Shown in pieces: positions 2,882 through 62,984 of a stretch of 64,000 nucleotides of DNA (position 1 is its first letter; every line of letters begins with the position of its first letter). A model generated the notes under the pieces. It saw nothing but the letters and a program-made list of their open reading frames with translations, did no database searches and was not told where the DNA came from. Position numbers and translations under genes: made by a program. The stretch is from Hypanus sabinus (lineage: Eukaryota), in assembly GCF_030144855.1 (NCBI RefSeq), contig NW_026779593.1, positions 1-64,000 on the forward strand. The letters are read 5' to 3'.

Positions 2882-3551
2882 TTTGTGGCCATTTGCTGGT
2901 CAAACATTCAGACAAAGTATTGTAATCCAAGAATTGCCGGATGGGTTATTGGCACAATATGCATCGTGTTCTGTTTAGTGAACGTCCTTTATTATTCCTG
3001 CATTGAGAGGCTGGAATTAGTATTTGGGAAGGGAAATGGAGGACGTGCAGGTCCAAGAGCTCACTTCACCAGGATCCACTTTTTGAGTGGTTTTCCTGAG
3101 TGGACCGTCCGATATATCCACTGCGTCCTTTCTTTCACATTTTGTTACTGAACATCCTGACCGTCAGACGGATCCTGGCTCCAGCCGAGTCCGAAGAGGA
3201 CTCCGGGGACATTGAACTGGCGAGAAGCAGCAGGATCCGGAGAAGAAGAGCCGGAGACAGTCCATCGTTCTGCTCTTCACCCTGTCGGCGAGTTTCCTCC
3301 TGTGCTGGGGGACAACCACGCTTGTCTTCATTTTGCTGCGGTGCCTCTACTCTGACCTGGAAACGTCCATTCGGCTTTTCATGGCGCAACGGGCGGGAGC
3401 TGAGATTCAGCTTTTCAGCTGCTGCATAAACACCTTCATTTACGGCGTGACCCAAACCAAATTCAGAGAGCAGCTGAAGATGACGGCTCTCTATCCCACT
3501 CATATGCTTGTTAGCTTGGGGAGACAGCGTTTAACGCGGACTTACCCGTGA
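2882..3551 (+). pseudogene. GPR139-like pseudogene psi1 (TM3 end to C-terminus)
   Basis: Starts abruptly at (F)VAICW. It has two 1-nt deletions (tattattcctg; cctggctccagc) and in-frame TGA stops (FS*VD, RGH*TG). The C-terminal piece LRCLYSDLETSIRLFMAQRAG...NTFIY matches the intact genes. Confidence 0.9.
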
Positions 3552-3664
3552 TGAAGTGCAATTGCTCCAGAAAGGATGCGCCCGCATGTTTCAGCATGTT
3601 TTTTAATTATCATTTATGATTTTTTTTGTGCTGCCTGTTTGTGCCGGGATAAATCACAATACAA

Positions 3665-4433
3665 AGAAACATGGAAAACCTATACGACAATACAGGCCCT
3701 TCGAAACACAAATTTGTGCCGAACATGTTTCTACCTTAGAAATATAGCCTTACCTATAGACCTCTATTATACTATGCTCCATGTACCTATCCAAAGGCCA
3801 CTTATCGTATCGGCTTCCACCACCGTTGCCGGCAGCCCATTCCTCGCACTCACCACTCCCTGAGTAAATACGTACCCCTGACACGTCCTCTGTACCTACT
3901 CCCCATCAACTAAAACGCGTGTCCTTCTGTGTTTCACCATTTCATCACTGGGAAAAGCTTTCTACTATCCACATGATGCATGCCTCCCATCATCTTGTAC
4001 ATCTCTATCAGGTCACCTCTCATCCTGCGTCACTCCATGGAGATAAGGCAGAGTTACTCAACCTATTCTCATAGGGCATGGTCCCCACTCCAGGCAACAT
4101 CCTTGTAAATATCATCTGCACTCTTTCTATGGCTTCCACATCCTTCCTCTAGTGAGGCAGTAGATCTGAGCAAAGAACTCCAAGTGGGGTCTGACCATGG
4201 TCCTATGGAGCTGCAACATTACCTCTCGGCTCTTAAACTCAATCCAACGATTGATGAAGGCCAATACACCGTACGCCTTCTTAATCACTGAGTCAACCTG
4301 CGTAGCTGCTTTGAGTGTACCTGGACCCCAAGATCCCTCTGATCCTCCACACCGTCAAAAGTCTTACCATTAATACTATATTCTACAGTAATATTTGACC
4401 TAACAGAATGAACCACTTTACACTTATCTGGGT
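3665..4433 (-). mobile_element. CR1 LINE 3' fragment
   Basis: The reverse strand contains ggtcagaccccacttggagt (the RPHLE region) and a CR1-like 3' end (aaacatggaaaacc...acaggcccttcg on the + strand). Boundaries are approximate. Confidence 0.8.
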
Positions 4434-4560
4434 TTTGGGCGTGGCGGGGGGGGGGGGCGGTGTAGACACCATGATCAGTATAACGGCTTTATTTATGCAA
4501 CAAAATAAATCTTAGTTTTTGCACGGGGGATCCAGTTCCCGTAAGACAAACAAAGCAGAA

Positions 4561-4705
4561 TTATTTGTGAGGTTATGATAATTAACACCATATGGAACGC
4601 AGCTGGTTTCATCATCGGCAAACCGAATCTGCTATATAAGATCCAACATGCAGTCTCTTTGCTTGACTTGTGAATGAACCATCAAGGCGCACAGAAACCG
4701 TAGAA
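4561..4705 (+). promoter_or_regulatory. Putative core promoter of gene A1 (equivalent TATA at 18151, 30284, 43802, 55993)
   Basis: TATATAAG at 4633-4640 lies about 220 nt before the ATG. It is preceded by TAATTA (4579), CCATATGG (4588) and CAGCTG (4600). The block is conserved in front of all five full-length genes. Confidence 0.6.
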
Positions 4706-4852
4706 GTGTTGCGACTGAAGGACGCACGTTTTATTTCTCGTGCCCTTACTCTTATGGATTAAATATTTTGTGAATACTTTACAGAGTTATCAGCCGGATA
4801 TTTCTTGCGTCTCTGGATAAATATTATTCCAAGCGGAGAATACAAATACTGC

Positions 4853-7589
4853 ATGGATACAGCAAGGAAAATATGCTACCCGGTTATTGCAGCCATCGGC
4901 GTCCCTGGTAAGGCTTCCCAGTTCTAACTGGTGATCGGATCGTGGTATTTTACTTCAACATCTCGCTCGTGATCTGTCCTTCCATTTAATCCATTAATAT
5001 ATGTATTAATCGAGTAACAAATTTATTTGCTAATACCCACTGTAATGAGTGCTGTAAACATTTGTATTTGGCAATAGGTCGAATGATCTGTCTTTACCCG
5101 TTGCTGAACGACCAAGAATTGTGTGTGCAGGTCGCATTTAAGTCGATTTATCGCTACAGGTTTCATCCTTAAATCATCAAGATCTGCTAGACGATTACCA
5201 TGGACACTCGGGTTTGTTGTCACCGCCNNNNNNNNNNNNNNNNNNNNNNNNNNNNNNNNNNNNNNNNNNNNNNNNNNNNNNNNNNNNNNNNNNNNNNNNN
5301 NNNNNNNNNNNNNNNNNNNNNNNNNNNNNNNNNNNNNNNNNNNNNNNNNNNNNNNNNNNNNNNNNNNNNNNNNNNNNNNNNNNNNNNNNNNNNNNCCAGG
5401 TCAGCTGCCATTTGTGGCAGATCTTCCCAACCGTTTGTTTGAATGTCGTGGATCCTTCCCATTAACCGAGAAGTCGAGGAACCCCTAATGGAGAAATCTC
5501 CTCTGTCGAGGGAAATAATGGACGGTTAAGGCCGAGATATTTCATCAGAACGAGATACTATGCTTGGAGAGGACATCATAACAAGATGGGAGAAGAAGCT
5601 CAATAATAAAGACTCTGGCAAAACACGTGAACCCATCTATCTGTTTCAATAGATGCTACCTGGACGAATTGCTTTGAATGTTTCTCTGTTGTCCAGTGTT
5701 GTGTGGGTGTAGTGGCGGCATCTCCTGCTGATAATTTGACGTCTTTACACGATGTATTAACAATTCATAATTTCACGGAATAACCTACTACAGTCTTTTC
5801 TCTTATTGCTGACAACCATTGTTGGAGCTACTTCTTTCATAATCTCTCTCACAATTAGCTGGCTTTACATCAGGCGATCGCACCCCTTTTGTATGACGTT
5901 CACCCCAACTATTAGCGGACGGATGCGTAGACCGCAGTTCGGGAACTCCAAGTTCACTCATTCAGCAGCATTCATTTCTGTATCATATCGAAAGCGAATT
6001 TTGTCTCGTGCAATACATTGGCGAAATTCAAAAACGTGTCTGATTATACGCCGTTTATTTATATTTTCATGCGAGACGTTTGCTTAAACTGAACAAACAG
6101 TTCGGAGTCAACTCATCTTGTGCCCGTGTAGTCCTGCATAGGACAGACGGATACAGTTGATGGGTTTCTCCGTCCAACACCGAAGACAGCTTAGTCCGTT
6201 CCGTAGGTGTTCCCTGTCCTGCTGCGTTCCACCAGCCCCGTGTTATCTGGGTGTAGTGGCGGCAGCTCATGTTAATTATTTTTTCTTTCCACGATGTTCT
6301 AACGCTTTCGATTTTTTTCTGAATTACCCTTGAAAGTCAACTTTGAAAGTCGGACCTTGAGAAGCATGGAGTACATCAGCAAAAGTCCACACTCGGTTCC
6401 ACTCCTCTAACAGATTGTCCAAAAGAGGTACGCATACATTGCGTTACGCATACATTCCACAGGAACAATTTTAATCAAGACCTGGTTTGAAGTGAAATTT
6501 CAAACGGTGACATTGTCCGATATGTGTCGGATAGCGATGGCGACTTAGATTAAATATATTATGACAAGATGTCCTGTCGTGTTAGAATTAACTTTTAAAA
6601 TGCAGTTTGATTGTATGTTATGCATGTCAAAAAAAAAAAAAAAAGAAATCTTCTCGTCATTTTTTCTTTCTTTGTTTCTAGTTAACCTAGTGGCGATCGT
6701 GATACTCAGCCGAGGAAAGTGTGGTCTCTCCAAAGGGATCACTCGGTATCTGGTGGCGATGGCCGTGGCCGATCTTGCGGTGGTGATCATCGAAGTCGGG
6801 TACTTCCAGATCGTTGATGCGTACCGAGCGTACTGGCTGTTGCTTCCCCCTCCGTTCTGTTTCGTCCACTTCGCCTTCTGTTACGTGTCTTTAGATTGTT
6901 CCGTGTGGCTGACTGTGGCGTTCACTTTCGATCGGTTTGTGGCCATTTGCTGGTCTAAGATTCAGGCAAAGTACTGTAACCCAAGAATTGCCGGAGGGGT
7001 TATTGGCACAATATGTGTCGTGTTCTGTTTAAAGAACGTCCCTTATTACTTCCTGCATCAAGAGGCTGCAATTAGTACTTCGGGAACGAAATGGAAGACG
7101 TGCCAATCCAAGGGATTGCTTCTCCTGGATCCAGATTTTGAGTGGTTTTCCTGGGTGGATCGTCTGTTAAATCCGCTGCTTCCTTTCTTCCTCATTTTGA
7201 TCCTCAACGTCCTGACCGTCAGACAGATCCTGGCCTCCAGCCGAGTCCGCAGGGGACTCCGGGGACAGAGAACTGGCGAGAAGCAGCAGGATCCGGAGAT
7301 GAAGAGCCGCAGACAGTCCATCGTTCTGCTCTTCACCCTGTCGGCGAGTTTCCTCATCTGCTGGGCGACAACGACGCTTGTCTTCATTTTGCTCCGGTGC
7401 CTCTACACGGACCTGGAAACGTCCATTCGGCTTTTCATGGCGCAACGGGTGGGCGCTGTGATTCAGCTTTTCAGCTGCTGCACAAACACCTTCATTTACG
7501 GCGTGACCCAGACCAAATTCAGGGAGCAGCTAAAGACTACGGCGCTCTATCCGGTTCATATTCTTTGTAGCATGGGGAGGCAGTGTTAA
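4853..7589 (+). CDS. GPR139-like class A GPCR, gene A1 (2 exons: 4853-4907, 6682-7589; 320 aa)
   Basis: Exon 1 reads MDTARKICYPVIAAIGVP and ends G|GTAAG (phase 1). The acceptor is a polypyrimidine tract plus TAG at 6679-6681, and exon 2 continues VNLVAIVILSRGKCGLSK. The product has seven hydrophobic segments with AxADL (TM2), SVWLTVAFTFDRFVAIC (TM3), PYY (TM4), CW (TM6), NTFIY (TM7) and KFR (helix 8). These motifs resemble the GPR139/GPR142 family, but this is not a one-to-one orthologue. Confidence 0.92.
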
Positions 7590-10353
7590 CTGTACGGCTG
7601 TTCCAGAAATGATGGCTCCGCAATTGGCAGCACGTTTTTAATTGTCGTTTATTAAAATATTGTTTGTGCTGCCTGTTATGCCTGTATTACGCCGTTCCTT
7701 CCTGAACTATCCCTTTCCGGGTTAAATCAAGTTATTTGTCTATAGTGTTCACAGTACAATATGCACTCACCACTGGACGCTTATTACGTTCCCTTATACA
7801 ACTGCTCGTTTTCGTCAACATCCATATAGTCAAACATGTGTCGGCACCTGAATATGTTAAGACAAGCAGACATGGAGATGCGGATGAGTTCGTGCTCAGA
7901 TCGGTTCAAAAGTCAGAATGGGGATCAAAAATGATCTTTGAACCTTCACTGATTGAAGTCGAACGGTCAGCAGAAATGATTGTTGGAGGCAGACTGGGTT
8001 GTTTGGGTAATGCCGCAGCGCCGGAAATTCGGAGATTCCCACGCACAGCAGTCTAACTTAGAGATTACAGATAATGATGAGAGAAGCAAAAATGAAGCAT
8101 CCAGTTGCAAGCGGTTCTGAAAGCGGAAAAACCGCTTTTATGAGATTGTTCAGAGAAGAATGACCAGAATGGTTTAAGAGGACTAGACAGCGAAAGTATC
8201 TCAAAGAGTGATGTCTTTTAACAATGGTGCCCAGAATGCACCGAATATTGACGGGGAAGTGTTACAGTAGCAGAGGGCGGCACTGAAATTCATCTGTATA
8301 CCACAGAATGAGACACACACGAAATGCTCGGCGAGCACAGCAGGGCAGGTGTCTCCGTCGTGAGCAATAGGGAGCGAAAGATTCGGGCCGAAGCACTGAC
8401 GTCTTGCTACCCTATTCCAGGGCCCAGCGGTACCACGGGAGAGGAGTGAGGCGGCAGTTTGCTTACGTAGCCTGTGAAAGAACCTGGGCATTCAGGACAT
8501 TTGACAGTGCCCAGGAAAATATCAAGGGAGACAGGGAGAAAACCAGGCGCAATATGCACCCAGACATTAGACACACTGATAGCAACTTAACGTTTGTTTA
8601 TCCCGTTCGGGAAGGCAGAAAGATGCAGACCAGAATGACATTCTCAGTAGTAGAAATCTTGCGTTTACTGAAAAGAATAACATGCTTTATTATAATTAGA
8701 TACATCTCCGCGGAGCACTCTCAGTGCCGCACACCTCCTTCTCATCCTGTAATCGGACAACCTCGAGGCGAGGAAACATGGAGACGCGGAGCGGGACGAC
8801 ATTCGGTTCCATTTCTCCGGTGACAGGAATCACCGATTAAAGCGTTGAGGAGCATTGAGACATCGGGGCGAATGCGTAAGGCGAACCACTTCTCTAACGC
8901 CGACTGCCTTCATCTTGGTCGGTGCTGAGAAGGAGTCTGTGAGCGGCCAGTCTCTGTGTGGCTAGCTGTGGCAGGCGGGTCGGCTTCAGCCCTCGAACGG
9001 TGCCTCTCTCTCTGATGCTGAAGGAGGATATTGCCGTTGTTCTGCGTTATGGGTTCGACCGTCGCGTTTATAAACTGTGGATTTACGGTGTTTATCATCT
9101 GTGTTTTTATTTTCTTGCACGTTCCCTTTCCGTTTAGTTTATGAAGAGGTTTGATAGCTGATGCTCACGTTACCTTCTTGCAGATAGATGTTTGTGCGTG
9201 GGGAAGGGTTTGGGAATACTGCAGACATTTTGTGCGGGCGAAGAGGAATTCGGAGGATGAGGATCGAGATACCTATTTCTGTGCAAGAGGTGCATTTCAA
9301 CTTTCTCACTGAACTGCTTTCGTGATCCCTCTTGGTTTGCGGCTATTCAGAGAAGGCGTTCCTCAGAATTTTATATGGATTCACCTTTTGTTAACAAATG
9401 AATCAGTGAGCCTTTTAACTTTTGAGAAACTCTCAATAAGCCATCACTTGTCACCACACTTTCCGAATTCCCAAACCTGTGTTGAACACTTATGCATGTT
9501 ATCCCCGTTGCATTGTGTACCCACTGTCGGTCATGGCGGTGAACTCATTCAATGAATACAAGTTCATCCCCGGATAAGATAACACAGAGCTTCTCCACAT
9601 AAATTGTGGTGGGGGGGGGGGGATCGCGGGCGAGAAGGGTGGATTCTAAGTTGCTTCTGTGCCTGGGGATGCTTCGGGAGTTCTGTCTCTTCGGGTCCGG
9701 TTACCGGATTGCCGGACGTTTGAAGCTTCATGCTCTGCTCCGTGTCAAGATACGAATCGCCTGCAGTTTGTCTGTGCTATACTGTGTCGAGATCCGTACT
9801 GCCGGCCGTTTGCTTCTACAGGGGCCACCTCATGTCAAGATAAGAATGGCCCGCTGTTTGTCTGCGCCATTCTGTGTCGAAATAAGGATTGGCAGCCATT
9901 TACCTTTCCGCTTAATGCTGCGTGTGATGAAGGGTTTAGCATGTCGACTGCTCCTCTGTCCACCCACCCGCGCTGTTTGCCCGTGTTTACGAAGTCACTT
10001 GACCACTGAGTATCTATATTTGAAGTTCCCTCCCGCGCCGGTCGACCGAGTTAATTTCCTGCCCCCTGTGTAAATAGGAGTAGGACACTCGGCCCTTTGT
10101 TCTTTGCCGGCCGCTCTCATCCTTTGGTCCACATCTGTGCTCTGCATAAGTCCCGCCACTAAACGCCAGAGTCCTGATGTAGTGACCGGGTTCGATCCCC
10201 GGTCCAGCTTCGCTCACCCCTTGGCTCCCCTCGGCCTACTCCTCGCTCCCCGGCCTTCCTTGCAACTATTGACTTCTGTTAATGTTACCAGCGTTTCGGT
10301 GTCCTGCATTTTAGTTTGCTTTCTTCGCTCCTTGCAACATCAATATGCCACCG

Positions 10354-10388
10354 TCTCTCTCTCTCTCTACCTCCCTCCCTCTCTCTCT

Positions 10389-10438
<50 letters not shown>
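10354..10438. repeat. (CT)n/(CA)n microsatellite
   Basis: Directly visible. The paralogous site at 36050-36177 is N. Confidence 0.95.
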
Positions 10439-10439
<1 letters not shown>

Positions 10440-11129
10440 GGAGAATCTGCTGTCACACACTCAACACTGAAGATCAGAGATAGTGAAAGAGTGAGTCAAA
10501 GCAATGCTGGAGATATTGGGAATTTGACAAGAAAGGATGGTGAATTAGGGAAACAAATTAGGGATGTTGGAAAAACAGGTGGACGGGTCAAGCGGAGAGG
10601 AAACTGGGCGAAGAGCCTGGTTAATGGCCTGGTTGAGTCGCTGGGCGATGTGAAACTTTGCTTCTGGGTGTGAGGTAGATGAATTCGGATTGATAAGCAA
10701 GGGGATGGGGAGCAGGTTATATAAAATCGAAGAATTTGCTGTTAGTTTCCGCGGGCTGTAAACGACATAGGTAGAACCGGAAATACTATTCCTCTGGTTA
10801 ACGTTTGCTCTCTTCATTATAGTGTTATTGTGTCAATTGGAAATAAATTCTATATGAATGGAAAATGAGGAGTCTATGGGGCTATGGTGGACAGGGTGCT
10901 GATGCTCAAAATCGAGTTCCTCGTCTCCACTTGGAAGTATCTTTCTCTGCCAGACACCTTCTGGACCGTAGCGCATATCAGCTGTAATACAGCGGGGACG
11001 CAGCAAGAACAGTTTGTCAGACTGTTGCTTGCTTGTTAATAAAGCTTTCTTTTCAATAAAGGACGCGTTGCCCTTAGCGTTACACCATCAAAGCGCCAGC
11101 GATCAATTCGTTCTGCTCGTTGAAGAATA

Positions 11130-11481
11130 TTGGACGGTCTCTCCGCCACCATAGTCTGTATTTTTATCAATTATGCTATTGGTTGCACTGTTGTATCTAT
11201 GTTGTTTTGTGCAGGTCTTGTAGATTTAGTTTTTGGTCTTGTTTGTCTGGTGGCTTTGGAGCTCCTTTCCGGGGTGCGCGCTAAGACGCTAGTGCAATAT
11301 TAATATGCAACAGCCTCTCCAGATTCTGGATTGGGGATTGCCAAACGTTATGTAGATTTTCTAGTTAGTCTGATTGGTCATATGCTTTTGTGATATCATT
11401 CTGGAGGAACGTTCTCTCATTTTTTTAACTGCATTGTATTTGTGGTTTCTAAATGACAATAAACTGGATCTGAATCTGAAT
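11130..11481 (+). mobile_element. 3' end of a non-LTR retroelement with an (AATCTG)n-type tail (duplicate at about 36850-37202)
   Basis: Ends ...aaatgacaataaactggatctgaatctgaa, i.e. AATAAA followed by a short tandem tail. The 5' boundary is approximate. Confidence 0.5.
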
Positions 11482-12159
11482 AATAAATAAAGTAAGAATA
11501 TTGAACNNNNNNNNNNNNNNNNNNNNNNNNNNNNNNNNNNNNNNNNNNNNNNNNNNNNNNNNNNNNNNNNNNNNNNNNNNNNNNNNNNNNNNNNNNNNNN
11601 NNNNNNNNNNNNNNNNNNNNNNNNNNNNNNNNNNNNNNNNNNNNNNNNNNNNNNNNNNNNNNNNNNNNNNNNNNNNNNNNNNNNNNNNNNNNATAAGAAA
11701 ACTGTGCTGACGCAACGGGAGCGTTTCTGCGCAGGTGCGACAAAGAGCTTGAAAAGGAAAAGTTTTTCGACAGGAGTCGTTGACTGGGGTACTGTGCAGA
11801 CGCAACTGGCGTTCCCGCACAGGTCGAGAAAAATTTTCAACTGCAAAACCAGTTATCATATAAGAGAGATAACGCCCTGCGGTGAGGTTAACGTGGGAGA
11901 GAATAGGGTGGGTGTAATTTTGAATACAGTTGTGGGAGATTGGGAGAGGTAAACGTAGATGGAAGGATAGGTAAGTGAGGGTATGGATTGGGAACAATGG
12001 TTGACTTATCATCCCCGCGCTACGTACTGCTCCCAAGGAGAGGTTCTGACCCTGTGCAGAGCTCCGTCCCCAAAGCTTTTTGCCAAGGAGGGGTCCCGGC
12101 TGTGTTCCTGTTCTCCCAAGACCAAAGCTCTGAGTCCCAGTTCTCCAACTCTTCCAACA

Positions 12160-12450
12160 CTTAGAATCGATAGTTTGATTTATAAAGACTAATGTACCAA
12201 AAGTTTTCTTTACGACCCTATCTATCTGTGACGCCACTTTTAGGGGATTATGTATTTGTATCCCCAGATCTCTCTGCTCTTCAGCACTCCTGAAAGTCCT
12301 ATCATTTACCTTGTACGTTCTACCTTTGTTTGTCCTTCGAAAGTGCAATACCTCAGACTTTTCAACATTAAAGTCCATCTGCCATTTCTCAGCCCAATTT
12401 TCCAGGTGGTCTAAATCCTTCTGCAAGCTTTGGAAACCTTCCTCACTTTC
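12160..12450 (-). mobile_element. CR1 LINE RT fragment
   Basis: Translates as LQKDLDHLENWAEKWQMDFNVEKSEVLHF...EQRDLGIQIHNPLKVASQIDRVVKK. Confidence 0.88.
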
Positions 12451-15400: not shown

Positions 15401-16032
15401 AGTTCTGGCCTTTATCTTGATATTTTGGGAAATGGCTCATTTCACAGACCGGTACATATAACAGTTGTTCAACCATTTTTTTTACTGCAAGAAGGTGAGT
15501 GAAACGATTAAATAGGCGATCTAAACAACCGATATCCTCAGTATTATATTATATTTATTATGGCTAATGATTTATATTTTAGTACCTTATCTTCTCCTGC
15601 ACATCGCTGTTGTTCTCTTCAAATGTGAGTACGGGCTATAAAATGGACCTCCGTTTGTATTTTGGGAGATATACGCACTTTGATGAGGCATTAATATTGA
15701 ACTTTGACTTTCTACCTTTTAGGATCTGAATAAGACAAGAGATAGATAGCGTGGAGGAAGGAGTGGAAGTGTCCTCTGTTTCATATAACGGGTTCAATTC
15801 TGTACCCGTCAACGATCCATTTTCATACTTCCTTGGTCCCTGCTGCTTTACATTGGTAACACAATAGAGTTTCAGCTATTTCCGCCTTCACCGTTACCTA
15901 AAGCATGTTAAATCGGGAGAAAGGCACGAGGCGGATGCATACACTCATAACACTGCCGACTATTTTGGGGACTGTTTTCAGGGGCGTGTGACATTAACAA
16001 ACTTTACGTTTAGTAAGAAATCACCTTATTTA

Positions 16033-17715: not shown

Positions 17716-17897
17716 CCATTCTTCCAAGTTCTCTTAGACCTTTTGCAATCCCATTCCTACCTCAGCACTATCTACCTCTGCACCTAACTTCCAGTCATCT
17801 GCAAACTTTGCCAGAATGCCATCAATTCCACTATCTAAATCATTAAGAAACAATATGAAAAGAAATGGTCCAAATACTGACCCCTGAGGAACGCCTC
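17716..17897 (-). mobile_element. CR1/L2-type RT core fragment (duplicate at about 43367-43548)
   Basis: The reverse strand translates as GVPQGSVFGPFLFILFLNDLDSGIDGILAKFADD. Confidence 0.85.
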
Positions 17898-49500: not shown

Positions 49501-49789
49501 CATTACTTTTCTGTTAAGTTACCGGCTTTCTTATAAATACTGTGCTGCAAAAAAAATGTAACTAGAGCTGATTGGTCCTAATTAAGGATCTCGGTCCGAA
49601 ATGCCGTCTGCTTCTTCCTATCCTAAGGTACTTCTGAGTTCCTCCAGCATTTGGTATGTGTATCTCCTTCTTATTTTTATTTCTGTCCAAACTCTGAAGT
49701 CTGAAGTGATTCAAAGCACTGTTACGAGTTGGTCTTTGGGAGCTCACTTCGAAAATAAATTATGCGCTTACACATTTATAAAAATAACA

Positions 49790-54242: not shown

Positions 54243-54912
54243 TTTCTGGCCATTTGCTGGACAAACATTCAGACAGAGTATTGTAATCCAAGAATTGCCG
54301 GATGGGTTATTGGCACAATATGCGTCGTGTTCTGTTTAGTGAACGTCCTTTATTATTCCTGCATTGAGAGGCTGGAATTAGTATTTGGGAAGGGAAATGG
54401 AGGACGTGCAGGTCCAAGAGCTCACTTCACCAGGATCCACTTTTTGACTGGTTTTCCTGAGTGGACCGTCCGATATATCCACTGCGTCCTTTCTTTCTCA
54501 TTTTGTTACTGAACATCCTGACCGTCAGACGGATCCTGGCTCCAGCCGAGTCCGCAGGGGACTCCGGGGACATTGAACTGGCGAGAAGCAGCAGGATCCG
54601 GAGAAGAAGAGCCGGAGACAGTCCATCGTTCTGCTCTTCACCCTGTCGGCGAGTTTCCTCCTGTGCTGGGGGACAACCACGCTTGTCTTCATTTTGCTGC
54701 GGTGCCTCTACTCTGACCTGGAAACGTCCGTTCGTCTTTTCATGGCGCAACGGGCGGGAGCTGAGATTCAGCTTTTCAGCTGCTGCATAAACACCTTCAT
54801 TTACGGCGTAACCCAAACCAAATTCAGAGAGCAGCTGAAGATCACGGCTCTCAATCCCGCTCATATGCTTGTTAGCTTGGGAAGACAGCGTTTAACGCGG
54901 ACTTACCCGTGA
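54243..54912 (+). pseudogene. GPR139-like pseudogene psi3
   Basis: Same lesions as psi1. Diagnostic variants (ETSVRL, KITALNPAH) are shared with psi4. Confidence 0.9.
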
Positions 54913-55025
54913 TGAAGTGCGATTGTTCCAGAAAGGATGCGCCCGCATGTTTCAGCATGTTTTTTAATTATCATTTATGATTTTTTTTGTGCTGCCTGTT
55001 TGTGCCGGGATAAATCACAATACAA

Positions 55026-55794
55026 AGAAACATGGAAAACCTATACGACAATACAGGCCCTTCGAAACACAAATTTGTGCCGAACATGTTACTACCTTAG
55101 AAATACAGCCTTACCTATAGACCTCTATTATACTAAGCTCCATGTACCTATCCAAAGGCCACTTATCGTATCGGCCTCCACCACCGTTGCCGGCAGGCCA
55201 TTGCTCGCACTCACCACTCTCTGAGTAAATACGTACCCCTGACAGGTCCTCTGTACCTACTCCCCATCAACTAAAACGTGTGTCCTTCTGTGTTTCACCA
55301 TTTCATCACTGGGAAAAGCTTTCTACTATCCACACGATGCATGCCTCCCATCATCTTGTACATCTCTATCAGGTCACCTCTCATCCTGCGTCACTCCATG
55401 GAGATAAGGCAGAGTTACTCAACCTATTCTCATAGGGCATGGTCCTCACTCCAGGCAACATCCTTGTAAATATCATCTGCACTCTTTCTATGGCTTCCAC
55501 ATCCTTCCTCTAGTGAGGCAGTAGATCTGAGCAAAGAACTGCAAGTGGGGTCTGACCATGGTCCTATAGAGCTGCATCATTACCTCTCGGCTCTTAAACT
55601 CAATCCAACGATTGATGAAGGCCAATACACCGTACGTCTTCTTAATCACTGAGTCAACCTGCGTAGCTGCTTTGAGTGTACCTGGACCCCAAGATCCCTC
55701 TGACCCTCCACACCGTCAAGAGTCTTACCATTAATACTATATTCTACAGTAATATTTGACCTAACAGAATGAACCACTTTACACTTATCTGGGT
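55026..55794 (-). mobile_element. CR1 LINE 3' fragment (copy)
   Basis: Copy of 3665-4433. Confidence 0.8.
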
Positions 55795-56261
55795 TTTGGG
55801 CGTGGCGGGGGGGGTGGCGGTGTAGACACCATGATCAGTATAACGGCTTTATTTATGCAACAAAATAAATCTTAGTTTTTGCACGGGGGATCCAGTTCCC
55901 GTAAGACAAACAAAGCAGAATTATTTGTGAGGTTATGATAATTAACACCATATGGAACGCAGCTGGTTTCATCATCGGCAAACCGAATCTGCTATATAAG
56001 ATCCAACATGCAGTCTCTTTGCTTGACTTGTGAATGAACCATCAAGGCGCACAGAAACCGTAGAAGTGTTGCGACTGAAGGACGCACGTTTTATTTCTGT
56101 GCTATTCGTCAATCAAGTTTCATTGTGAAACTTACTACTTCATTTCTCGTGCCCTTACTCTTATGGATTAGATATTTTGTGAATACTTTACAGAGTTATC
56201 AGCCGGATATTTCTTGCGTCTCTGGATAAATATTATTCCAAGCGGAGAACACAAATACAGC

Positions 56262-58880
56262 ATGGATACAACAAGGAGAATATGCTACCCGGTTATTGCA
56301 GCCATCGGCGTCCCTGGTAAGGCTTCCCAGTTCTAACTGGTGATCGGATCGTGGTATTTTACTTCAACATCTCGCTCGTGATCTGTCCTTCCATTTAATC
56401 CATTAATATATGTATTAATCGAGTAACAAATTTATTTGCTAATACCCACTGTAATGAGTGCTGTAAACATTTGTATTTGGCAAAAGGTCGAATGATCTGT
56501 CTTTACCCGTTGCTGAACGTCCAAGAATTGTGTGTGCAGGTCGCATTTAAGTCGATTTATCGCTACAGGTTTCATCCTTAAATCATCAAGATCTGCTAGA
56601 CGATTACCATGGACACTCGGGTTTGTTGTCACCGCCAACTCCAGAAAACGAAAATAGCGCACACACACACACACACACACACAGAAAAGCGACTGAATAA
56701 TTCACCAGGTCAGCTGCCATTTATGGCAGATCTTCCCAACCGTTTGCTTGAATGTCGTGGATCCTTCCCATTAACCGAGAAGTCGAGGAACCCCTAATGG
56801 AGAAATCTCCTCTGTCGAGGGAAATAATGGACGGTTAAGGCCGAGATATTTCATCAGAACGAGAAACTATGCTTGGAGAGGACATCATAACAAGATGGGA
56901 GAAGAAGCTCAATAATAAAGACTCTGGCAAAACACGTGAACCCATCTATCTGTTTCAATAGATGCTACCTGGACGAATTGTTTTGAATGTTTCTCTGTTG
57001 TCCAGTGTTGTGTGGGTGTAGTGGCGGCATCTCCTGCTGATAATTTGACGTCTTTACACTATGTATTAACAATTTATAATTTCACGGAATAACCTACTAC
57101 AGTCTTTTCTCTTATTGCTGACAACCATTGTTGGAGCTACTTCTTTCATAATCTCTCTCACAATTAGCTGACTTTACATCAGGCGATCGCACCCCTTTTG
57201 TATGACGTTCACCCCAACTATTAACGGAGGGATGCGTAGACCGCAGTTCGGGAACTCCAAGTTCACTCATTCAGCAGCATTCATTTCTGTATCATATCGA
57301 AAGCGAATTTTGTCTCGTGCAATACATTGGCGAAATTCAAAAACGTGTCTGATTATACGCCGTTTATTTATATTTTCATGCGAGACGTGTGCTTAAACTG
57401 AACAAACAGTTCGGAGTCAACTCATCTTGTGCCCGTGTAGTCCTGCATAGGACAGACGGATACAGTTGATGGGTTTCCCCGTCCAACACCGAAGACAGCT
57501 TAGTCTGTTCCGTAGGTGTTCCCTGTCCTGCTTCGTTCCACCAGCCCCGTGTTATCTGGGTGTAGTGGCGGCAGCTCATGCTAATTAGTTTTTCTTTCCA
57601 CGATGTCCTAACGCTTTCGATTTTTTTCTGAATTACCCTTGAAAGTCAACTTTGAAAGTCGGACCTTGAGAAGCATGGAGTACATCAGCAAAAGTCCACA
57701 CTCGGTTCCACTCCTCTAACAGATTGTCCAAAAGAGGTACGCATACATTGCGTTACGCATACATTCCGCAGGAACAATTTTAATCAAGACCTGGTTTGAA
57801 GTGAAATTTCAAACGCTGACATTGTCCGATATGTGTCGGATAGCGATGGCGACTTAGATTAAAAATATTATGACAAGATGTACTGTCGTGTTAGAATTAA
57901 CTTTTAAAATGCAGTTTGATTGTATGTTATGCATGTCAGAAATCTTCTCGTCATTTTTTCTTTCTTTGTTTCTAGTTAACCTAGTGGCGATCGTGATACT
58001 CAGCCGAGGAAAGTGTGGTCTCTCCAAAGGGATCACTCGGTATCTGGTGGCGATGGCTGTGGCCGATCTAATGGTGGTTGTCATCGAGGTCGCGTTCTAC
58101 CAGATCGTTGAAACATACCGAGTATACTGGCTTCGGCCATCACTTCCGTTCTGTTTAGTCCACTACGTCTTGTGTTACGTGTCTTTAGATTGTTCCGTGT
58201 GGCTGACTGTGGCGTTCACTTTCGATCGCTTTGTGGCCATTTGCTGGTCGAAGATTCAGAACAAGTACTGTACGCCAAGAATTGCAGGACGGATCATTGG
58301 CACAATATGCGTTTCGTTCTGTTTAAAGAACGTGCCTTATTACTTCCTGCACAAGGAACGCGCAAGCCTGTTTTGGAATCAATGCGATCAGAAATCGGCT
58401 CTCCACACAGATCCGCAGTTTGAGTGGTTTTACTGGTTAGACCGTCTTTTGAATCCGCTGTTTCCGTTCTTCCTCATTTTGTTCCTCAACATTCTGACAG
58501 TCAGACTGATCCTGGCATCCAGCCGAGTCCGTAGGGGGCTCAGGGGACAGAGAAAAAGCGAGAATCAGCAGGACCCGGAAATGAGGAGTAGGAGACAGTC
58601 CATTATACTGCTCTTCACATTGTCGGCGAGTTTCCTCCTGTGCTGGGCGACAACCACCCTGGTCTTCATTTTCCTGCGGAGCCTCTACACGGACCTGGAA
58701 ACGTCTATCCGACTGTGGATGACGCAGCGAGCGGGGACAGTGATTCAGCTTTTCAGCTGCTGCACAAACACCTTCATTTACAGTGTGACCCAGACCAAAT
58801 TCAGGGAGCAGCTAAAGATTGTCGCGCTCAGCCCTATTAATTTGCTTGTTAAGATGGTGAGGCGGTGCTTAGCGCACTGA
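56262..58880 (+). CDS. GPR139-like class A GPCR, gene C (2 exons: 56262-56316, 57976-58880; 319 aa)
   Basis: Exon 1 reads MDTTRRICYPVIAAIGVP with a GTAAG donor, and the TAG acceptor is at 57973-57975. The 7TM frame is intact with DRF and NTFIY, and ECL2 is shorter and divergent (KERASLFWNQCDQK). Confidence 0.92.
56660..56683. repeat. (CA)n microsatellite in the intron of gene C
   Basis: Directly visible. The paralogous sites at 5228-5395 and 30882-31127 are N. Confidence 0.95.
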
Positions 58881-59140
58881 TAAATGTGTTGAATAAAATG
58901 ATGTTTCCAAAATGACTCGTCAGCGGTCGTGGAAGCAAGTTTATAATTGTCATTCCTTAAAATGTCTGTTGTGCTCGGTACATAATCTGTACTTCCTGTC
59001 CTTCATTCCTGGAGCAAAATAATGACTCTCCAGTATAACTTATACTCTCCAGTATAATTGGTCAAGTTCTTTCACAATGCAATATACACTCAATGGCCAC
59101 TTTATTAGGTACCCTTCCCCGTCAGTTGTCTGGAACTCCT

Positions 59141-59400
59141 AAACATAGAAAGCCTAGACCACAAAACAGGTTGTTCGGCCCACAATGCTGTGCCTAGCAT
59201 GTACTGACTTTGAAAATCGCCCTCTATTTTTCCAAGCTTCTTGTAAATATCCAGTAGTCTCCCAACAGACTCAATCGTATCAGCCTTCACCACCGTCGCC
59301 GGCTGACCATTGCAGGCACACAGCACTCTCTGCGTAAAAAGAAAAACTCACCCTTGATATCTATCCTAAGCACCTTTAAACTGTGCCCTCTCGTGTTAGC
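59141..59400 (-). mobile_element. CR1 LINE 3' end fragment
   Basis: aaacatagaaagcct...ttcggcccacaatgctgtgcc...ttcaccaccgtcgccggc resembles 3665-3870. Confidence 0.65.
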
Positions 59401-62314
59401 CATATTGGTTATGTTACTCTATCCGGTTCTTTGTAATTAAAGTGAAGTCTCCAGCTTTGGTTCCGAAATACGATGAACTGTGACTTCATCTGCCGGAAGC
59501 CCAGGTGCATTAAACCATGAATCAGGTAACGGTTGTTTTATTGTAGGCATTGTATTTTTCTTTCGGGTGCGGAGATGGTGAGTATGGAGCACAGAGTGTA
59601 ATACTACTTTGGCTTTTGTGAGCGCTCTTCCAAATCGAATTCAGAGCTTCGCATTTCCAGACATAAACACAGATGTTTTAGGCAGCTTCGCCGTGCACCG
59701 CATGGACCGATCTTCATTCACTCGCTGCTGAGACTCAGTCCCGAAGGAAGTGACACAGTCGTCATTGCACTTGAGGATGGTCTCGATTTACTTTTTTTGT
59801 GTGGCATTCGCCTCAAAAAAAAAACAGTTTTTTTTTAAATCTCACCATCATTATCACTGATGTGAACATTAATTGTTTGTACGTTACAGAGCTTCGGAGC
59901 CTGACATCTGCCCTCAAAAATGGCAAAATCAGCGGGCTGGTAGGGGGTGACTGTGTAGCCAACAACAGGAACGTACACGGGAATGTCTCGAATAAACATG
60001 GAATGCTTTTGAATATAAATACAGTATTGACTGTGCTCTCGGTGTAATTCAAAATCTGCAATCCGGAAGGGCTTGTGCAGCGACTAAGGAGAGAGATGAG
60101 AGACAGATAACAACTATCAGGATATAAAGTCACATGAGGAAGGGGCATATTAATCTTTGACGATTGCTCTTACAGCGTATTTTCATACACATTACTAAGG
60201 CGTGATATTACCGAGATTTTCTGAGGGACAGGTTCACTATGTCGGACGAACGTAGTCGAGAAGAGAGCGGCTCAGCTGCGAGCGTGTTGCTATTTTCACG
60301 GGAATAAACAGAGATGTCTGCATCTATATGTCCCAAGCGGAGATGCCGTATTGTTGGCCGTCGGTAAGAGGAGGCACCAAACGATGGCGCCATCTCTATG
60401 ATGGAAGTTGGAATGGATACCCCTGTAATGTTTTAATCGGTCACAAGACATTGTTACCAGGGTGCGTTTAATAATAAATACCGACTGAGCAAGGACAAAC
60501 GAAGATCTACCGGTCTAAGACGTCGTAACAGTTGAAAAATATTTAAGGTGAACTTTACAGTTTTTTCAATCATTCTGGTGACTCATTGGTTAGGAAGTAA
60601 AATGGTCACTTTGATATAATTGGCCACGTGTGCTCCTTGGGTTGCAAGGGCCTATTATTCTGTTAGATTTCTAAATAAAACTAAAATGAACTTTTCCTTC
60701 TATTCATTAATACTTAACTGTTTCTTAATTATGTCACAGTCTGTTGTTATACAATTCTTTCTTGAACAACCAGTCCCTTATAAAATGTTCAGAATCCCAT
60801 TATACCTTCATTGAGGGCCGAATGAACCCACCGACGCTCCCTCTGTTCTAGAACTAACAATTTTTCATCAGACATCGCACCTTGACCTATTCGCCAAGAA
60901 ACTGCAAATAAAACATTCCAGTGCGTTGTTTCAACAATCAAAAATTCGGCAATGTACCGTTTATTCTATCTAATTGCACCCTCCTCCGCAACACACATAC
61001 ACAGCAGCCCCACAACCCGCGTTTTCTGTGCCGCAGCAATGAACAATAAAATGAGACCTGTTTCCATTCCATTGCGCTATTAGCGATGGGTTCAGTGAAT
61101 TTAATTCCAAATCGTGTCAAGAGGTGGCGCATTTGCAAATAGAATAGCGGATAAGTTGTGCAAGTGGCGACACTGCCTCTGATCAATATTGCACTCACGA
61201 CATGCTACGTTTTACACCGCTTTCCACGTCAAAATGGGCTCACCAAAGACGGAATTACTAATTACCTATTTCATATTTAAAATTCAGCGCCGCTGTGAGA
61301 ATTCCCCAAACCAGCAGCAGGAATGCTCTCAGTCCGCATCTGGAACATGTTCACCTGGAGAAGTTGCATCCTTTACGTCACACTGAACGCGGAAATTTCC
61401 TATAAAGATTCTCAACTTAAACTCTACCACACCACGAAAGTGAAGCACCGCGGACTGAGGAAATATGCGGCCGCATAGCACGTGACAGGAGATTTGGTCC
61501 CGCAATACGACACAAGTTAGGATTTCACTCTGTCCTCCATACTCATCATTTCCACACCCGAAAGAAAAGTACAAGGCTGGTAGTTAAAAGTCAATTTATT
61601 ATCAAAGTACGCGCTATGCATATGTCACCAAATACTATCTAATATCCTCTTCCTTGTGGTTGTTGACAGTGGAAGAAAAACAGCTGAATAAATGAAAAAC
61701 TGTAGACATATTCCAACTGACAACCAATACCGATGTTAAGAAGTAGACAAACTGTGCAAATTATTAAAGAATCAATAATAATAAATACAGATTTCTTGCT
61801 CTTTCACCCTCGCTTCTTTCTCTCCCCTCCTATTCTGGCGCTCTTCGTTGACCGTCTTTATCACGAGCACTTGCCCCGCTCTTTACGCCAATTAACCGGC
61901 ATTCTACTACCCTCTCGCTCACTTTCTCCTACCGTTGCCGGTTCCCTTTGGTCTTCGCCCACTGCTGCCTCTCGTCCAGTCTCTCGCCCCTGGTGTCTGT
62001 ATGTTCATGTCCCGCTCCCTCTTCTCTCCAGCACCACAAATTATTTCGTTCTGCACTACAATCGTCGGAGAGGTGTCAAGTCAGATTATATGCACATCCT
62101 ATGCACATTGCTCTCTTTCTACTTCACTTCGAAAACAGTGCATCACAGCAACAGGCACTTCGCCACTCAATGATATTCTGCACCCATCAGGTTAGTAATA
62201 AAATGTTCAACTAAACTATCATTTTCTGCCTCCAGAATGTCCCCACCCTTCTACTAATTTCACATTGCTATTGCATGGAAACGTGTCTTAGAATTTGGCT
62301 ACAATACGTGTCGT

Positions 62315-62984
62315 TTTCTGGCCATTTGCTGGACAAACATTCAGACAGAGTATTGTAATCCAAGAATTGCCGGATGGGTTATTGGCACAATATGCGTCGT
62401 GTTCTGTTTAGTGAACGTCCTTTATTATTCCTGCATTGAGAGGCTGGAATTAGTATTTGGGAAGGGAAATGGAGGACGTGCAGGTCCAAGAGCTCACTTC
62501 ACCAGGATCCACTTTTTGACTGGTTTTCCTGAGTGGACCGTCCGATATATCCACTGCGTCCTTTCTTTCTCATTTTGTTACTGAACATCCTGACCGTCAG
62601 ACGGATCCTGGCTCCAGCCGAGTCCGCAGGGGACTCCGGGGACATTGAACTGGCGAGAAGCAGCAGGATCCGGAGAAGAAGAGCCGGAGACAGTCCATCG
62701 TTCTGCTCTTCACCCTGTCGGCGAGTTTCCTCCTGTGCTGGGGGACAACCACGCTTGTCTTCATTTTGCTGCGGTGCCTCTACTCTGACCTGGAAACGTC
62801 CGTTCGTCTTTTCATGGCGCAACGGGCGGGAGCTGAGATTCAGCTTTTCAGCTGCTGCATAAACACCTTCATTTACGGCGTAACCCAAACCAAATTCAGA
62901 GAGCAGCTGAAGATCACGGCTCTCAATCCCGCTCATATGCTTGTTAGCTTGGGAAGACAGCGTTTAACGCGGACTTACCCGTGA
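62315..62984 (+). pseudogene. GPR139-like pseudogene psi4
   Basis: Appears identical to psi3 by eye, at offset 8072. Confidence 0.9.

What the first reader, a model, noticed from the sequence alone, without database searches (positions are those of the whole stretch)
2882..62984. Actively expanding tandem repertoire of orphan GPR139/GPR142-like receptors, a candidate unrecognised chemosensory family
Seen: nine same-strand receptor loci in 64 kb (4 intact, 1 frameshifted, 4 truncated), and the array continues at both edges. Known: mammalian GPR139 and GPR142 are single-copy, conserved receptors activated by aromatic amino acids (Trp/Phe). Tandem birth-and-death clusters of short GPCR genes are typical of OR/TAAR/V1R/T2R/MRGPR repertoires, and cartilaginous fishes have very few classical ORs. 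Inference: this lineage may have turned a GPR139-like ancestor into a large ligand-discriminating receptor repertoire (olfactory, gustatory, gut or immune sensing).
Basis: partly seen in the sequence, partly recalled or inferred. Interest (0 to 1): 0.9.

Follow-up and report, generated by a model that had tools for sequence, protein, structure and literature searches.

The report
Stingray GPR139-related receptor gene array
This stretch of Atlantic stingray DNA carries a recently duplicated row of receptor genes from a very large, unstudied shark-and-ray gene family whose ligand pocket varies while its signalling face stays fixed, which suggests many ligands, but nothing yet shows that it serves smell or taste.

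Summary
There are nine same-strand class-A GPCR loci: four intact (A1, B1, B2, C), one with a 1-nt frameshift (A2) and four truncated. They are not nine independent births. A ~25.7 kb unit (pseudogene + A + B) is repeated at 98-99.6% identity. The four truncated loci carry identical lesions, so they are copies of one dead gene. C is an A-type 5' part recombined onto an older receptor body. The genes have two coding exons. No N gap touches coding sequence, but two gaps lie in the introns of A1 and A2.

The window is the start of an 88.8 kb unplaced Hypanus sabinus scaffold. RefSeq already names these genes 'probable GPR139'. The family is elasmobranch-wide (2233 hits). GPR139 is the nearest solved human receptor, but identity is only ~20-25% and its pocket residues are not kept. 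Sharks also keep a separate, conserved single-copy relative.

Intact copies are under purifying selection (dN/dS 0.29-0.46). Variation concentrates in the outer half and pocket, unlike the single-copy control. This supports a ligand-diversified repertoire.

A chemosensory role is untested. No transcripts were seen in three RNA runs carrying the same species label as the best DNA holders, and no paper on the family was found. The scan has flagged this family elsewhere in this genome (35 notes).

The parts
1..25651 (+). Higher-order repeat unit 1 (psi1 + A1 + B1 + LINE fragments)
   Evidence: Self-blastn: 1-5227, 5396-10337, 10456-11506, 11693-14800, 15155-19124 and 19122-25651 align to unit 2 at 98.1-99.6% identity, at offsets of about 25.65-25.79 kb
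25652..51361 (+). Higher-order repeat unit 2 (psi2 + A2 + B2 + LINE fragments)
51362..58040 (+). Partial unit 3: psi3, then A-type promoter, exon 1 and intron, ending at a recombination breakpoint about 65 nt into exon 2 of gene C
   Evidence: 1-4743 aligns to 51362-56102 at 98.7%. In the sliding comparison from A1 position 5396, identity is 97-100% up to about 6745 and then drops to 63-89%
60308..64000 (+). Fourth copy of the pseudogene module, cut by the window end
   Evidence: 879-4567 aligns to 60308-64000 at 96.8%, and 52240-55927 aligns to it at 97.7%
2801..3542 (+). psi1: truncated, frameshifted receptor pseudogene (TM3 to C-terminus only)
   Evidence: tblastn shows three frames. The indel pattern is identical in all four psi copies
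4853..4907 (+). A1 exon 1 (ATG + 18 codons + 1 nt; donor G|GTAAGG)
   Evidence: RefSeq model P0007
6682..7589 (+). A1 exon 2. The spliced product is 320 aa, intact and identical to P0007. The intron holds N gap 5228-5395
18361..18415 (+). B1 exon 1
19932..20851 (+). B1 exon 2. The spliced product is 324 aa and intact
28452..29193 (+). psi2 (copy of psi1)
30504..30558 (+). A2 exon 1
32396..33302 (+). A2 exon 2. A 1-nt deletion at about 32434 shifts the frame after SRGK. The intron holds N gap 30882-31127
44012..44066 (+). B2 exon 1
45643..46562 (+). B2 exon 2, intact. At 45832-45851 (TM3, pocket face) five differences from B1 all match the A type
   Evidence: RefSeq P0010 uses an alternative 3' exon
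54162..54903 (+). psi3
56262..56316 (+). C exon 1
57976..58880 (+). C exon 2. The spliced product is 319 aa, intact and identical to P0001. An orthologue at 90% identity or more exists in Hemitrygon akajei (P0283)
62288..62975 (+). psi4
4465..4852 (+). Conserved upstream block shared by A- and B-type genes (86.5% identity). It has a TATA-like TATATAAG at -220 and TAATTA at -274 from the ATG. It is a putative promoter (inferred only)
24121..25133 (+). LINE endonuclease/RT-type ORF fragments between the receptor genes (copy at 49831-50843)
   Evidence: Pfam Exo_endo_phos_2, E 4e-10

Best explanation
The window is the first 64 kb of an unplaced Hypanus sabinus scaffold. It holds a higher-order tandem array of two-exon rhodopsin-class GPCR genes.

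How the array grew. It grows by unequal (non-allelic homologous) crossing-over and gene conversion between units. A 25.7 kb unit that already contained a dead copy plus an A-type and a B-type gene was duplicated very recently. A third partial unit recombined inside the conserved TM1/ICL1 coding stretch with an older C-type gene.

What the family is. The genes belong to an elasmobranch-wide multigene family that RefSeq labels 'probable GPR139'. This family forms a lineage of its own, sister to a small salamander group. It is separate from a conserved single-copy GPR139-like gene that sharks also keep. Its nearest human relative, at a distance, is GPR139, within the bilaterian GPR139/142 and MIP/FMRFamide-type receptor supergroup.

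How it probably works. The proteins have almost no extracellular N-terminus. Their cytoplasmic face is nearly invariant (ICL1, DRF/ICL2, ICL3 base, N-T-x-x-Y, helix 8), while the outer half and pocket are highly variable. The most likely reading is a repertoire of receptors that bind different small ligands or short peptides and feed one shared intracellular transducer.

Shown here: the anatomy, the duplication history, purifying selection and pocket-focused diversity. Inferred: ligand diversification. Not shown: the tissue, the cell type, the ligands and any chemosensory role. I put about 0.3-0.35 on an olfactory, gustatory or other chemosensory function.
For: Loci and exon structure.
Repeat unit at 98.1-99.6% identity.
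Identical lesions in the four psi copies.
Chimeric C and the B2 conversion patch.
Organism, scaffold and RefSeq names.
Family size: 2233 hits, with the top 120 all elasmobranch; 104 clusters at 50% identity with E<=1e-30; all ten sampled clusters with a named source are elasmobranch.
GPR139 is the best PDB hit: 42 vs 28 bits for a single sequence and 68 vs 49 bits for a profile.
Supergroup context: PMC8557429. The best non-vertebrate hits are 'FMRFamide receptor-like'.
Tree: the conserved single-copy clade has support 100/99. The salamander plus expanded-family clade has 95/90. The window's subfamily has 100/100, with one sampled sequence in each shark and the skate against 13 in stingrays.
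dN/dS is 0.29-0.46 between A, B and C. dS is 0.018-0.026 between duplicate units.
Outer vs inner entropy is 1.70 vs 0.84 bits, p 7e-16.
Control: the outer/inner ratio is 1.90 in the expanded family against 1.09 in the single-copy orthologue set, at equal overall divergence (0.61 vs 0.58 identity). Pocket positions average 2.32 vs 0.60 bits.
The AF2 model shows seven helices plus helix 8, with pLDDT 87.9.
Against: - No transcript evidence for the window's genes. RNA runs X6-X8, which carry the same species label as the best DNA holders, show zero depth on B1 exons, and their tissues are unknown. Those same runs held next to none of gene C's sampled words. No RNA-Seq run was listed.
- Only one small RNA-labelled run, from another organism, has exon-2-only contigs at 93-98% identity. 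That could be relatives' transcripts or contaminating DNA.
- GPR139 and GPR142 themselves could not be put in the tree, so the family's exact position relative to them is untested.
- Structure search does not single out GPR139.
- The near-identical units sit on an unplaced scaffold with seven N runs, and a near-identical B-type gene sits at the very start of another scaffold. Copy number and the A2 frameshift could therefore be partly assembly products.
- Pocket diversity alone cannot tell a sensory repertoire from an immune or neuromodulatory one.
Confidence: 0.75

Rival explanations
1. The family is an elasmobranch chemosensory repertoire (olfactory, gustatory or solitary chemosensory cells). 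It is expressed sparsely, one or a few genes per sensory cell, and compensates for the very small OR repertoire of cartilaginous fishes.
For: - Tandem clusters with pseudogenes and very recent duplicates.
- A family of thousands of sequences across elasmobranchs.
- A variable pocket with a frozen cytoplasmic face, in contrast to the single-copy control.
- Lineage-specific growth in stingrays.
- Very short N-terminus.
- The catshark sensory-organ paper found no GPCR among its top olfactory-specific genes. This is compatible with sparse expression but does not support it.
Against: - There are no expression data at all for any sensory tissue.
- Zero depth in three RNA runs carrying the same species label as the best DNA holders.
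- No O/E-like site within 500 nt upstream of exon 1.
- No sequence membership in OR, TAAR, ORA or T2R families. Only Pfam 7tm_1 is hit, and the nearest relatives are peptide or amino-acid receptors.
- Two coding exons, unlike most OR, TAAR and T2R genes.
Confidence: 0.32
2. The family is an immune or barrier-surveillance receptor repertoire, analogous to chemokine, formyl-peptide or MRGPR-type receptors. It would be expressed in leukocytes or epithelia and would diversify against pathogen- or damage-derived ligands.
For: - Pocket-focused diversification and rapid turnover fit host-pathogen dynamics as well.
- After GPR139, the profile hits include chemokine, C5a and GPR15-type receptors.
- Other first-stage notes on this genome report GPR139-like genes interleaved with TCR V segments. 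These are unchecked.
Against: - No expression data.
- dN/dS is below 0.5 overall, with no sign of positive selection in the few pairs available.
- The nearest kin are neuropeptide or amino-acid receptors.
Confidence: 0.18
3. The genes are neuromodulatory receptors like GPR139 itself. They would be brain-expressed and activated by aromatic amino acids or peptides with aromatic C-termini, and their copy number would have no special meaning.
For: - GPR139 is the best human hit.
- The supergroup ancestrally binds W/Y/F-amide peptides.
- Pro7.50 is absent in GPR139, in the conserved single-copy gene and in this family.
Against: - The GPR139 contact residues E3x32, R6x51 and N7x38 are not kept and are among the most variable positions, whereas the single-copy relative keeps R6.51 in all sequences.
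- Hundreds of paralogues with a variable pocket are atypical for a neuromodulator receptor.
Confidence: 0.12
4. Much of the apparent array is an assembly product. Alleles or collapsed and expanded repeats were laid in tandem on an unplaced scaffold, so there are fewer real loci than nine, and the A2 frameshift is an error.
For: - Units are 98-99.6% identical.
- There are seven N runs, three of which match between units 1 and 2.
- The scaffold is unplaced and begins inside the array.
- A near-identical B-type gene sits at the start of a 902 kb scaffold.
Against: - There are three to four copies rather than two, with structural differences: unit 3 is chimeric, and a fourth psi module lies at an 8 kb offset.
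- The copies differ by 1-2% with their own indels.
- The A2 deletion is not in a homopolymer.
- RefSeq proteins P0001 and P0007 occur on this scaffold only.
Confidence: 0.15

Closest known systems
Human GPR139 (and GPR142), class A orphan receptors activated by L-Trp, L-Phe and aromatic peptides
   Same: GPR139 is the best solved-structure sequence match for single sequences and for the family profile. Both are rhodopsin-class receptors with an ECL2 hairpin, and both lack Pro7.50 in the NPxxY position (N-F-F-L-Y in GPR139, N-T-F-I-Y here). Both fit the bilaterian GPR139/142 and MIP/FMRFamide-type supergroup.
   Different: Identity is only ~20-25%. Foldseek does not rank GPR139 first. GPR139 pocket residues E108 (3x32), R244 (6x51) and N271 (7x38) are not kept; here the three intact gene types have Cys, Thr and Thr at these positions, and the positions are highly variable across the family. 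Pro6.50 is also absent. There are hundreds of tandem paralogues rather than a single conserved gene. The N-terminus is nearly absent.
Conserved single-copy 'probable GPR139' gene of non-mammalian gnathostomes (the Latimeria P0218 type, annotated beside or fused with TMEM183A)
   Same: It is the nearest large vertebrate clade in the tree and forms a 100/99-supported vertebrate group with the expanded family. It also lacks Pro6.50 and Pro7.50 and has an E/D-R-F motif.
   Different: It keeps 50-66% identity from shark to coelacanth to reptile and appears to be present as a single conserved gene. Its pocket is conserved (0.60 bits against 2.32), and R6.51 is invariant. Sharks hold it in addition to the expanded family, so the expansion is not simply this gene multiplied.
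Vertebrate chemoreceptor repertoires (OR, TAAR, ORA/V1R, T2R) and MRGPR-type sensory-neuron receptors
   Same: Tandem birth-and-death clusters with pseudogenes, lineage-specific expansions, a variable binding pocket with conserved signalling face, and short genes.
   Different: There is no sequence membership in any of these families. The genes have two coding exons. Expression in sensory cells has not been shown.

Membership tests
Rhodopsin-class (class A) GPCR, Pfam 7tm_1 | Significant match to PF00001 across seven helices | tested here: met
   E 3e-21 to 5e-20, covering profile positions 2-260 of 260. The AF2 model has 7 TM helices plus helix 8, pLDDT 87.9
Rhodopsin-class (class A) GPCR, Pfam 7tm_1 | Core motifs: D/E-R-Y/F at 3.49-3.51, Trp6.48, N-P-x-x-Y, and Cys3.25 with an ECL2 Cys | tested here: inconclusive
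   DRF, W6.48, Y7.53, C78 and C155 are invariant or nearly so. However, Pro6.50 is replaced by T or V, and Pro7.50 is replaced by Thr in 73 of 74 sequences
GPR139/GPR142 subfamily | GPR139 or GPR142 is the closest characterised receptor by sequence | tested here: met
   phmmer gives 42 bits against 28 for the next hit. The profile gives 68 bits, E 5e-18, against 49. This was tested in one direction only
GPR139/GPR142 subfamily | Orthology-level similarity to GPR139 or GPR142 | tested here: not met
   19-20% identity in the Foldseek alignment and about a quarter in the phmmer alignment. Even the slower-evolving single-copy relative scores only 70 bits
GPR139/GPR142 subfamily | Conserved agonist-contact residues E108 (3x32), R244 (6x51) and N271 (7x38), as described in PMC12775434 | tested here: not met
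   The equivalent positions are C85, T245 and T273 in gene C. Across 74 family members they are L/I/S/C/R, Y/T/I/N and Y/F/N/T. The TM7 register depends on a low-identity alignment
GPR139/GPR142 subfamily | Groups with GPR139 and GPR142 in a phylogeny, to the exclusion of other class A receptors | not testable with these tools
   No tool returned GPR139 or GPR142 sequences as usable ids. The trees contain only relatives found by search
GPR139/GPR142 subfamily | Activation by L-Trp, L-Phe or aromatic peptides | not testable with these tools
   Needs a cell-based assay
Chemosensory receptor repertoire (functional class) | Large tandem multigene family with pseudogenes and lineage-specific turnover | tested here: met
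Chemosensory receptor repertoire (functional class) | Diversity concentrated at ligand-facing positions, compared with a control family | tested here: met
   Outer/inner entropy ratio 1.90 against 1.09. Pocket positions average 2.32 against 0.60 bits
Chemosensory receptor repertoire (functional class) | Expression in chemosensory cells, typically sparse and one receptor per cell | not testable with these tools
   No tissue-labelled RNA was available. Three RNA runs carrying the same species label as the best DNA holders show zero depth, and no RNA-Seq run was listed
OR / TAAR / ORA / T2R families (sequence membership) | Sequence match to those families' models or solved members | tested here: not met
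   Only 7tm_1 is hit in Pfam. None of the listed PDB sequence hits is an odorant, trace-amine, V1R or bitter-taste receptor

The most novel reading that the evidence does not exclude
The elasmobranch 'probable GPR139' expansion is a previously undescribed vertebrate chemoreceptor family, derived from an ancient GPR139-related gene. It would supply sharks and rays with the large odorant- or tastant-discriminating repertoire that their tiny OR, TAAR and ORA sets lack. Arrays such as this one would be where new specificities are made, by unequal crossing-over and by gene conversion of pocket-lining TM3 residues.
Probability: 0.3. Interest if true: 0.9.

Novelty: new variant of a known kind. Interest (0 to 1): 0.55.

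Why it matters
Cartilaginous fishes are known for acute chemical senses, yet they carry very few classical odorant receptor genes. A family of thousands of sequences across elasmobranchs, with a frozen signalling face and a diversified pocket, is the kind of gene set that could fill that gap. It could equally serve an unknown immune or neuromodulatory system.

No paper in the searched library describes this family, although genome annotation pipelines already name its members after GPR139. That name is misleading for ligand prediction.

This window adds a clean, datable example of how the family grows. It shows a 25.7 kb higher-order duplication, a recombinant gene and a conversion patch on the pocket face of TM3. 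It also yields concrete, testable gene models: A1, B1, B2 and C.

The work also separates three things that share one database name: true GPR139, a conserved single-copy non-mammalian relative, and the expanded elasmobranch family.

Tried and rejected
- Expression. Two run searches and two read layings were used. The runs holding the sequence cover introns and flanks as well as exons, so I read them as DNA, in short contigs. No splice joint was found. The RNA runs carrying the same species label as the best DNA holders showed nothing on the exons. Tissue names are coded, so no conclusion on tissue is possible.
- Structure search. Foldseek against Swiss-Prot models and against PDB returned generic class A peptide receptors at TM 0.7-0.78. 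It cannot discriminate subfamilies.
- Placing GPR139 and GPR142 in a tree. This step was left undone.
- Promoter motifs. There is no O/E-like site (at most 1 mismatch) within 500 nt upstream of any exon 1. A TATA-like box and a TAATTA site are conserved but unspecific.
- Rfam and tandem-repeat scans of the window found only a (CA)n microsatellite.
- A transcript-like ENA contig (P0096, L001) turned out to be a metagenome-assembly fragment that starts inside exon 2. It was uninformative.
- Supplements of the catshark sensory paper are not held.
- Positive selection. Pairwise Nei-Gojobori estimates on five genes show none overall. The value above 1 in the outer half for B1/B2 rests on 4 non-synonymous against 1 synonymous change and is due to the conversion patch.
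- Rejected idea: that the truncated loci are cut by assembly gaps. They are not. Their 5' ends lie in read sequence, and all four share the same lesions.

Full report
**What is in the window**

tblastn with the long receptor ORFs finds nine loci, all on the + strand. They are psi1 2801-3542, A1, B1, psi2 28452-29193, A2, B2, psi3 54162-54903, C and psi4 62288-62975. The intact ones match only Pfam 7tm_1 (E 3e-21 to 5e-20).

The best database hit of gene C is a 100%-identical RefSeq protein of Hypanus sabinus, on an 88,831-bp contig of GCA_030144855.1. For A1 the gene's coordinates in the contig equal its window coordinates. The window is therefore the first 64 kb of that unplaced scaffold.

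**Gene models**

The RefSeq proteins start with MDT(A/T)R(K/R)ICYPVIAAIGVP, which the long ORFs do not encode. That 18-codon exon 1 lies 1.5-1.8 kb upstream of each full-length body, at 4853, 18361, 30504, 44012 and 56262. Its donor is CCTG|GTAAGG. The acceptor is tttctag|TTAAC (ctgacag|TTAAC in the B genes), at 6682, 19932, 32396, 45643 and 57976.

The spliced A1 (320 aa), B1 and B2 (324 aa) and C (319 aa) are open. A2 lacks one G at about 32434, in AAGTGTGG, which is not a homopolymer. It reads out of frame after SRGK.

The four psi loci lack exon 1 and the first ~200-250 nt of exon 2. All four carry the same indel pattern, including 1-nt deletions at exon-2 positions 239, 368 and 553. They are four copies of one gene that was already dead when copied.

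**Assembly gaps**

There are seven N runs, one more than listed (40616-40803). None overlaps a coding exon.

Runs 5228-5395 and 30882-31127 lie in the introns of A1 and A2. The joining of exon 1 to exon 2 in those two genes therefore depends on the scaffold. The flanks of every gap align collinearly to the sister unit. The corresponding part of gene C (56637-56704) is uninterrupted. I did not fill or read across any gap.

**Architecture and history**

Self-alignment shows a ~25.7 kb unit (psi + A + B + LINE fragments) at 1-25651 and 25652-51361, with 98.1-99.6% identity. A third start at 51362 is 98.7% identical over 4.7 kb. A fourth copy of the psi module lies at 60308-64000 (96.8-97.7%).

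Gene C is a recombinant. In the sliding comparison from A1 position 5396, its intron and the first ~65 nt of exon 2 are 97-100% identical to unit 1; the exon 1 region is 98.4% identical in the self-alignment. Beyond about 58040 identity falls to 63-89%. The body of C has an orthologue at 90% identity or more in Hemitrygon akajei.

B1 and B2 differ at ten sites. Five of these lie within 45832-45851, on the pocket face of TM3, and there B2 matches the A type. These features point to unequal crossing-over and gene conversion.

Synonymous divergence between sister units is 0.018-0.026. Between A, B and C it is 0.17-0.46.

To the right of the window, the same scaffold carries a further A-type gene (P0284), more than 10 kb beyond C. 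A B-type protein in the same 90%-identity cluster sits at 1909-5318 of a 902,882-bp scaffold. The array is therefore larger than the window and breaks the assembly. For the same reason its exact copy number is uncertain.

**The family**

The word-indexed search gives 2233 proteins. The best 120 are all from sharks, rays and skates, mostly named 'probable G-protein coupled receptor 139'. The exhaustive search over 50%-identity representatives gives 104 clusters at E<=1e-30. The nine sampled clusters that carry a source name are all elasmobranch.

In a tree, the window's genes fall in a strongly supported subfamily (100/100). The subfamily has one sampled sequence each in Heptranchias, Pristiophorus, Scyliorhinus and Leucoraja, two in Narcine, and 13 in the stingrays Hypanus and Hemitrygon. 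A1 has a 92%-identical Hemitrygon counterpart. The subfamily is thus old and retained, and it expanded in stingrays.

**Relation to GPR139**

Among solved structures GPR139 is the best sequence match. A single sequence scores 42 bits against 28 for the next hit. The 74-sequence profile scores 68 bits (E 5e-18) against 49. Foldseek is not discriminating.

Outside vertebrates the best hits are 'FMRFamide receptor-like' proteins. This fits the published view that GPR139 and GPR142 are sister to protostome MIP, proctolin, FMRFamide-1 and myosuppressin receptors (PMC8557429).

Identity to GPR139 is only about 20-25%. The agonist contacts E108 (3x32), R244 (6x51) and N271 (7x38) (PMC12775434) correspond to Cys, Thr and Thr here, and they vary widely across the family. 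Trp/Phe sensing therefore cannot be carried over.

A search with the coelacanth relative shows a separate gene, conserved at 50-66% identity in sharks, sturgeon, teleosts, amphibians, turtles and squamates. No bird or mammal is among the 120 listed hits.

In the careful tree this conserved clade (100/99) is separate from the expanded family. The sister group of the expanded family is a small salamander group (95/90). Sharks thus have the conserved gene and the expansion side by side. GPR139 and GPR142 themselves could not be included in the tree.

**Signs of function**

Nei-Gojobori dN/dS between A1, B1, B2 and C is 0.29-0.46, which indicates purifying selection.

Across 74 family members the outer half of the protein (outer helix halves plus extracellular loops) has 1.70 bits of entropy. 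The inner half has 0.84 bits (p 7e-16). ICL1, DRF/ICL2, the TM5 and TM6 cytoplasmic ends, N-T-x-x-Y and the start of helix 8 are almost invariant.

As a control, 93 orthologues of the single-copy gene were compared. Overall divergence is the same in the two sets (mean pairwise identity 0.58 against 0.61).

| Measure | Expanded family | Single-copy control |
|---|---|---|
| Outer/inner entropy ratio | 1.90 | 1.09 |
| Mean entropy at 14 canonical pocket positions | 2.32 bits | 0.60 bits |

This is good evidence that the paralogues differ in what they bind while sharing an intracellular partner. The AF2 model (pLDDT 87.9) shows a helix starting at residue 2, so there is almost no extracellular N-terminus, and it shows an ECL2 hairpin.

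**What is not shown**

There is no evidence on tissue or cell type.

- The runs that hold the sequence cover introns and flanks as well as exons, so I read them as DNA. Summed depth over the conserved parts of exon 2 is tens of times that of the flanks, which agrees with many similar copies.
- Three RNA-labelled runs carrying the same species label as the best DNA holders have zero depth on B1 exons.
- One small RNA-labelled run of another organism has exon-2-only contigs at 93-98% identity. This is a weak hint that relatives are transcribed.
- No RNA-Seq run was listed for B1.
- No O/E-like site lies upstream of exon 1.
- Nine literature searches, and targeted look-ups inside six papers, found no description of this expansion.

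**Verdict**

- 'Tandem, recently duplicated, GPR139-related, ligand-diversified' stands.
- 'Nine births and deaths' shrinks to one recent higher-order duplication of three or four older lineages.
- 'Chemosensory' remains a reasonable but untested hypothesis, at about 0.3.

The scan has flagged the same family elsewhere in this genome: 35 notes mention GPR139. This window is therefore a good specimen rather than a unique find.

Noticed in passing
window 40616-40803: A seventh run of N (188 letters) is not in the program's list of gaps. It is intergenic and corresponds to the gap at 14801-15154 in unit 1.
   Followed up: partly
window 57976-58040 (breakpoint) and 51362-58880: Gene C is a recombinant. 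Its A-type upstream region, exon 1 and intron are 97-100% identical to unit 1 and are joined about 65 nt into exon 2 to a divergent body (63-89% identity). That body has an orthologue at 90% identity or more in Hemitrygon.
   Followed up: yes
window 45832-45851: Five of the ten B1/B2 differences cluster in 20 nt of TM3 (positions 3.29-3.35, the pocket face). There B2 equals the A type, which indicates a gene-conversion patch. The direction is uncertain, because B1 matches C at three of the five sites.
   Followed up: yes
proteins P0218, P0293-P0410 (not in the window): A conserved, apparently single-copy 'probable GPR139' gene occurs in sharks, sturgeon, teleosts, amphibians, turtles and squamates, and in two species is annotated as fused with TMEM183A. 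It has an invariant R6.51 and lacks Pro6.50 and Pro7.50. No bird or mammal is among the 120 listed hits. It is an uncharacterised orphan receptor distinct from GPR139 and GPR142.
   Followed up: partly
proteins P0215, P0268, P0271 (salamanders): A small salamander-only group is the sister of the elasmobranch expansion (support 95/90). This suggests the expanded family descends from a gene older than the split between cartilaginous and bony vertebrates. The group sits on a long branch, so this should be treated with caution.
   Followed up: partly
window 59059-59175, 59293-59400, 19521-19637, 21159-21392: Short stretches with summed contig depth in the hundreds to tens of thousands in the laid DNA and/or RNA-labelled runs. 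They are interspersed repeats (SINE- or LINE-like) flanking the receptor genes.
   Followed up: no
window 24121-25133 and 49831-50843 (+); 11449-12426 and 37800-38234 (-): LINE-derived ORF fragments lie inside each repeat unit. They include an endonuclease/reverse-transcriptase type (Pfam Exo_endo_phos_2) and, on the minus strand, an ORF that looks like a reverse-transcriptase tail by eye (no Pfam hit).
   Followed up: partly
window 10390-10438 vs 36050-36177: A (CA)24 microsatellite in unit 1 corresponds to an N gap in unit 2. Likewise, a low-complexity stretch at 56649-56693 in gene C's intron corresponds to the N gaps in the A1 and A2 introns. The gaps therefore appear to mark simple repeats.
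   Followed up: partly
family alignment A1, positions 244 and 284 of P0001: The whole family lacks both helix-kink prolines of class A receptors. Position 6.50 is T or V, and position 7.50 is Thr in 73 of 74 sequences. It also carries a conserved Asp at 3.37. The consequences for activation are unknown.
   Followed up: partly
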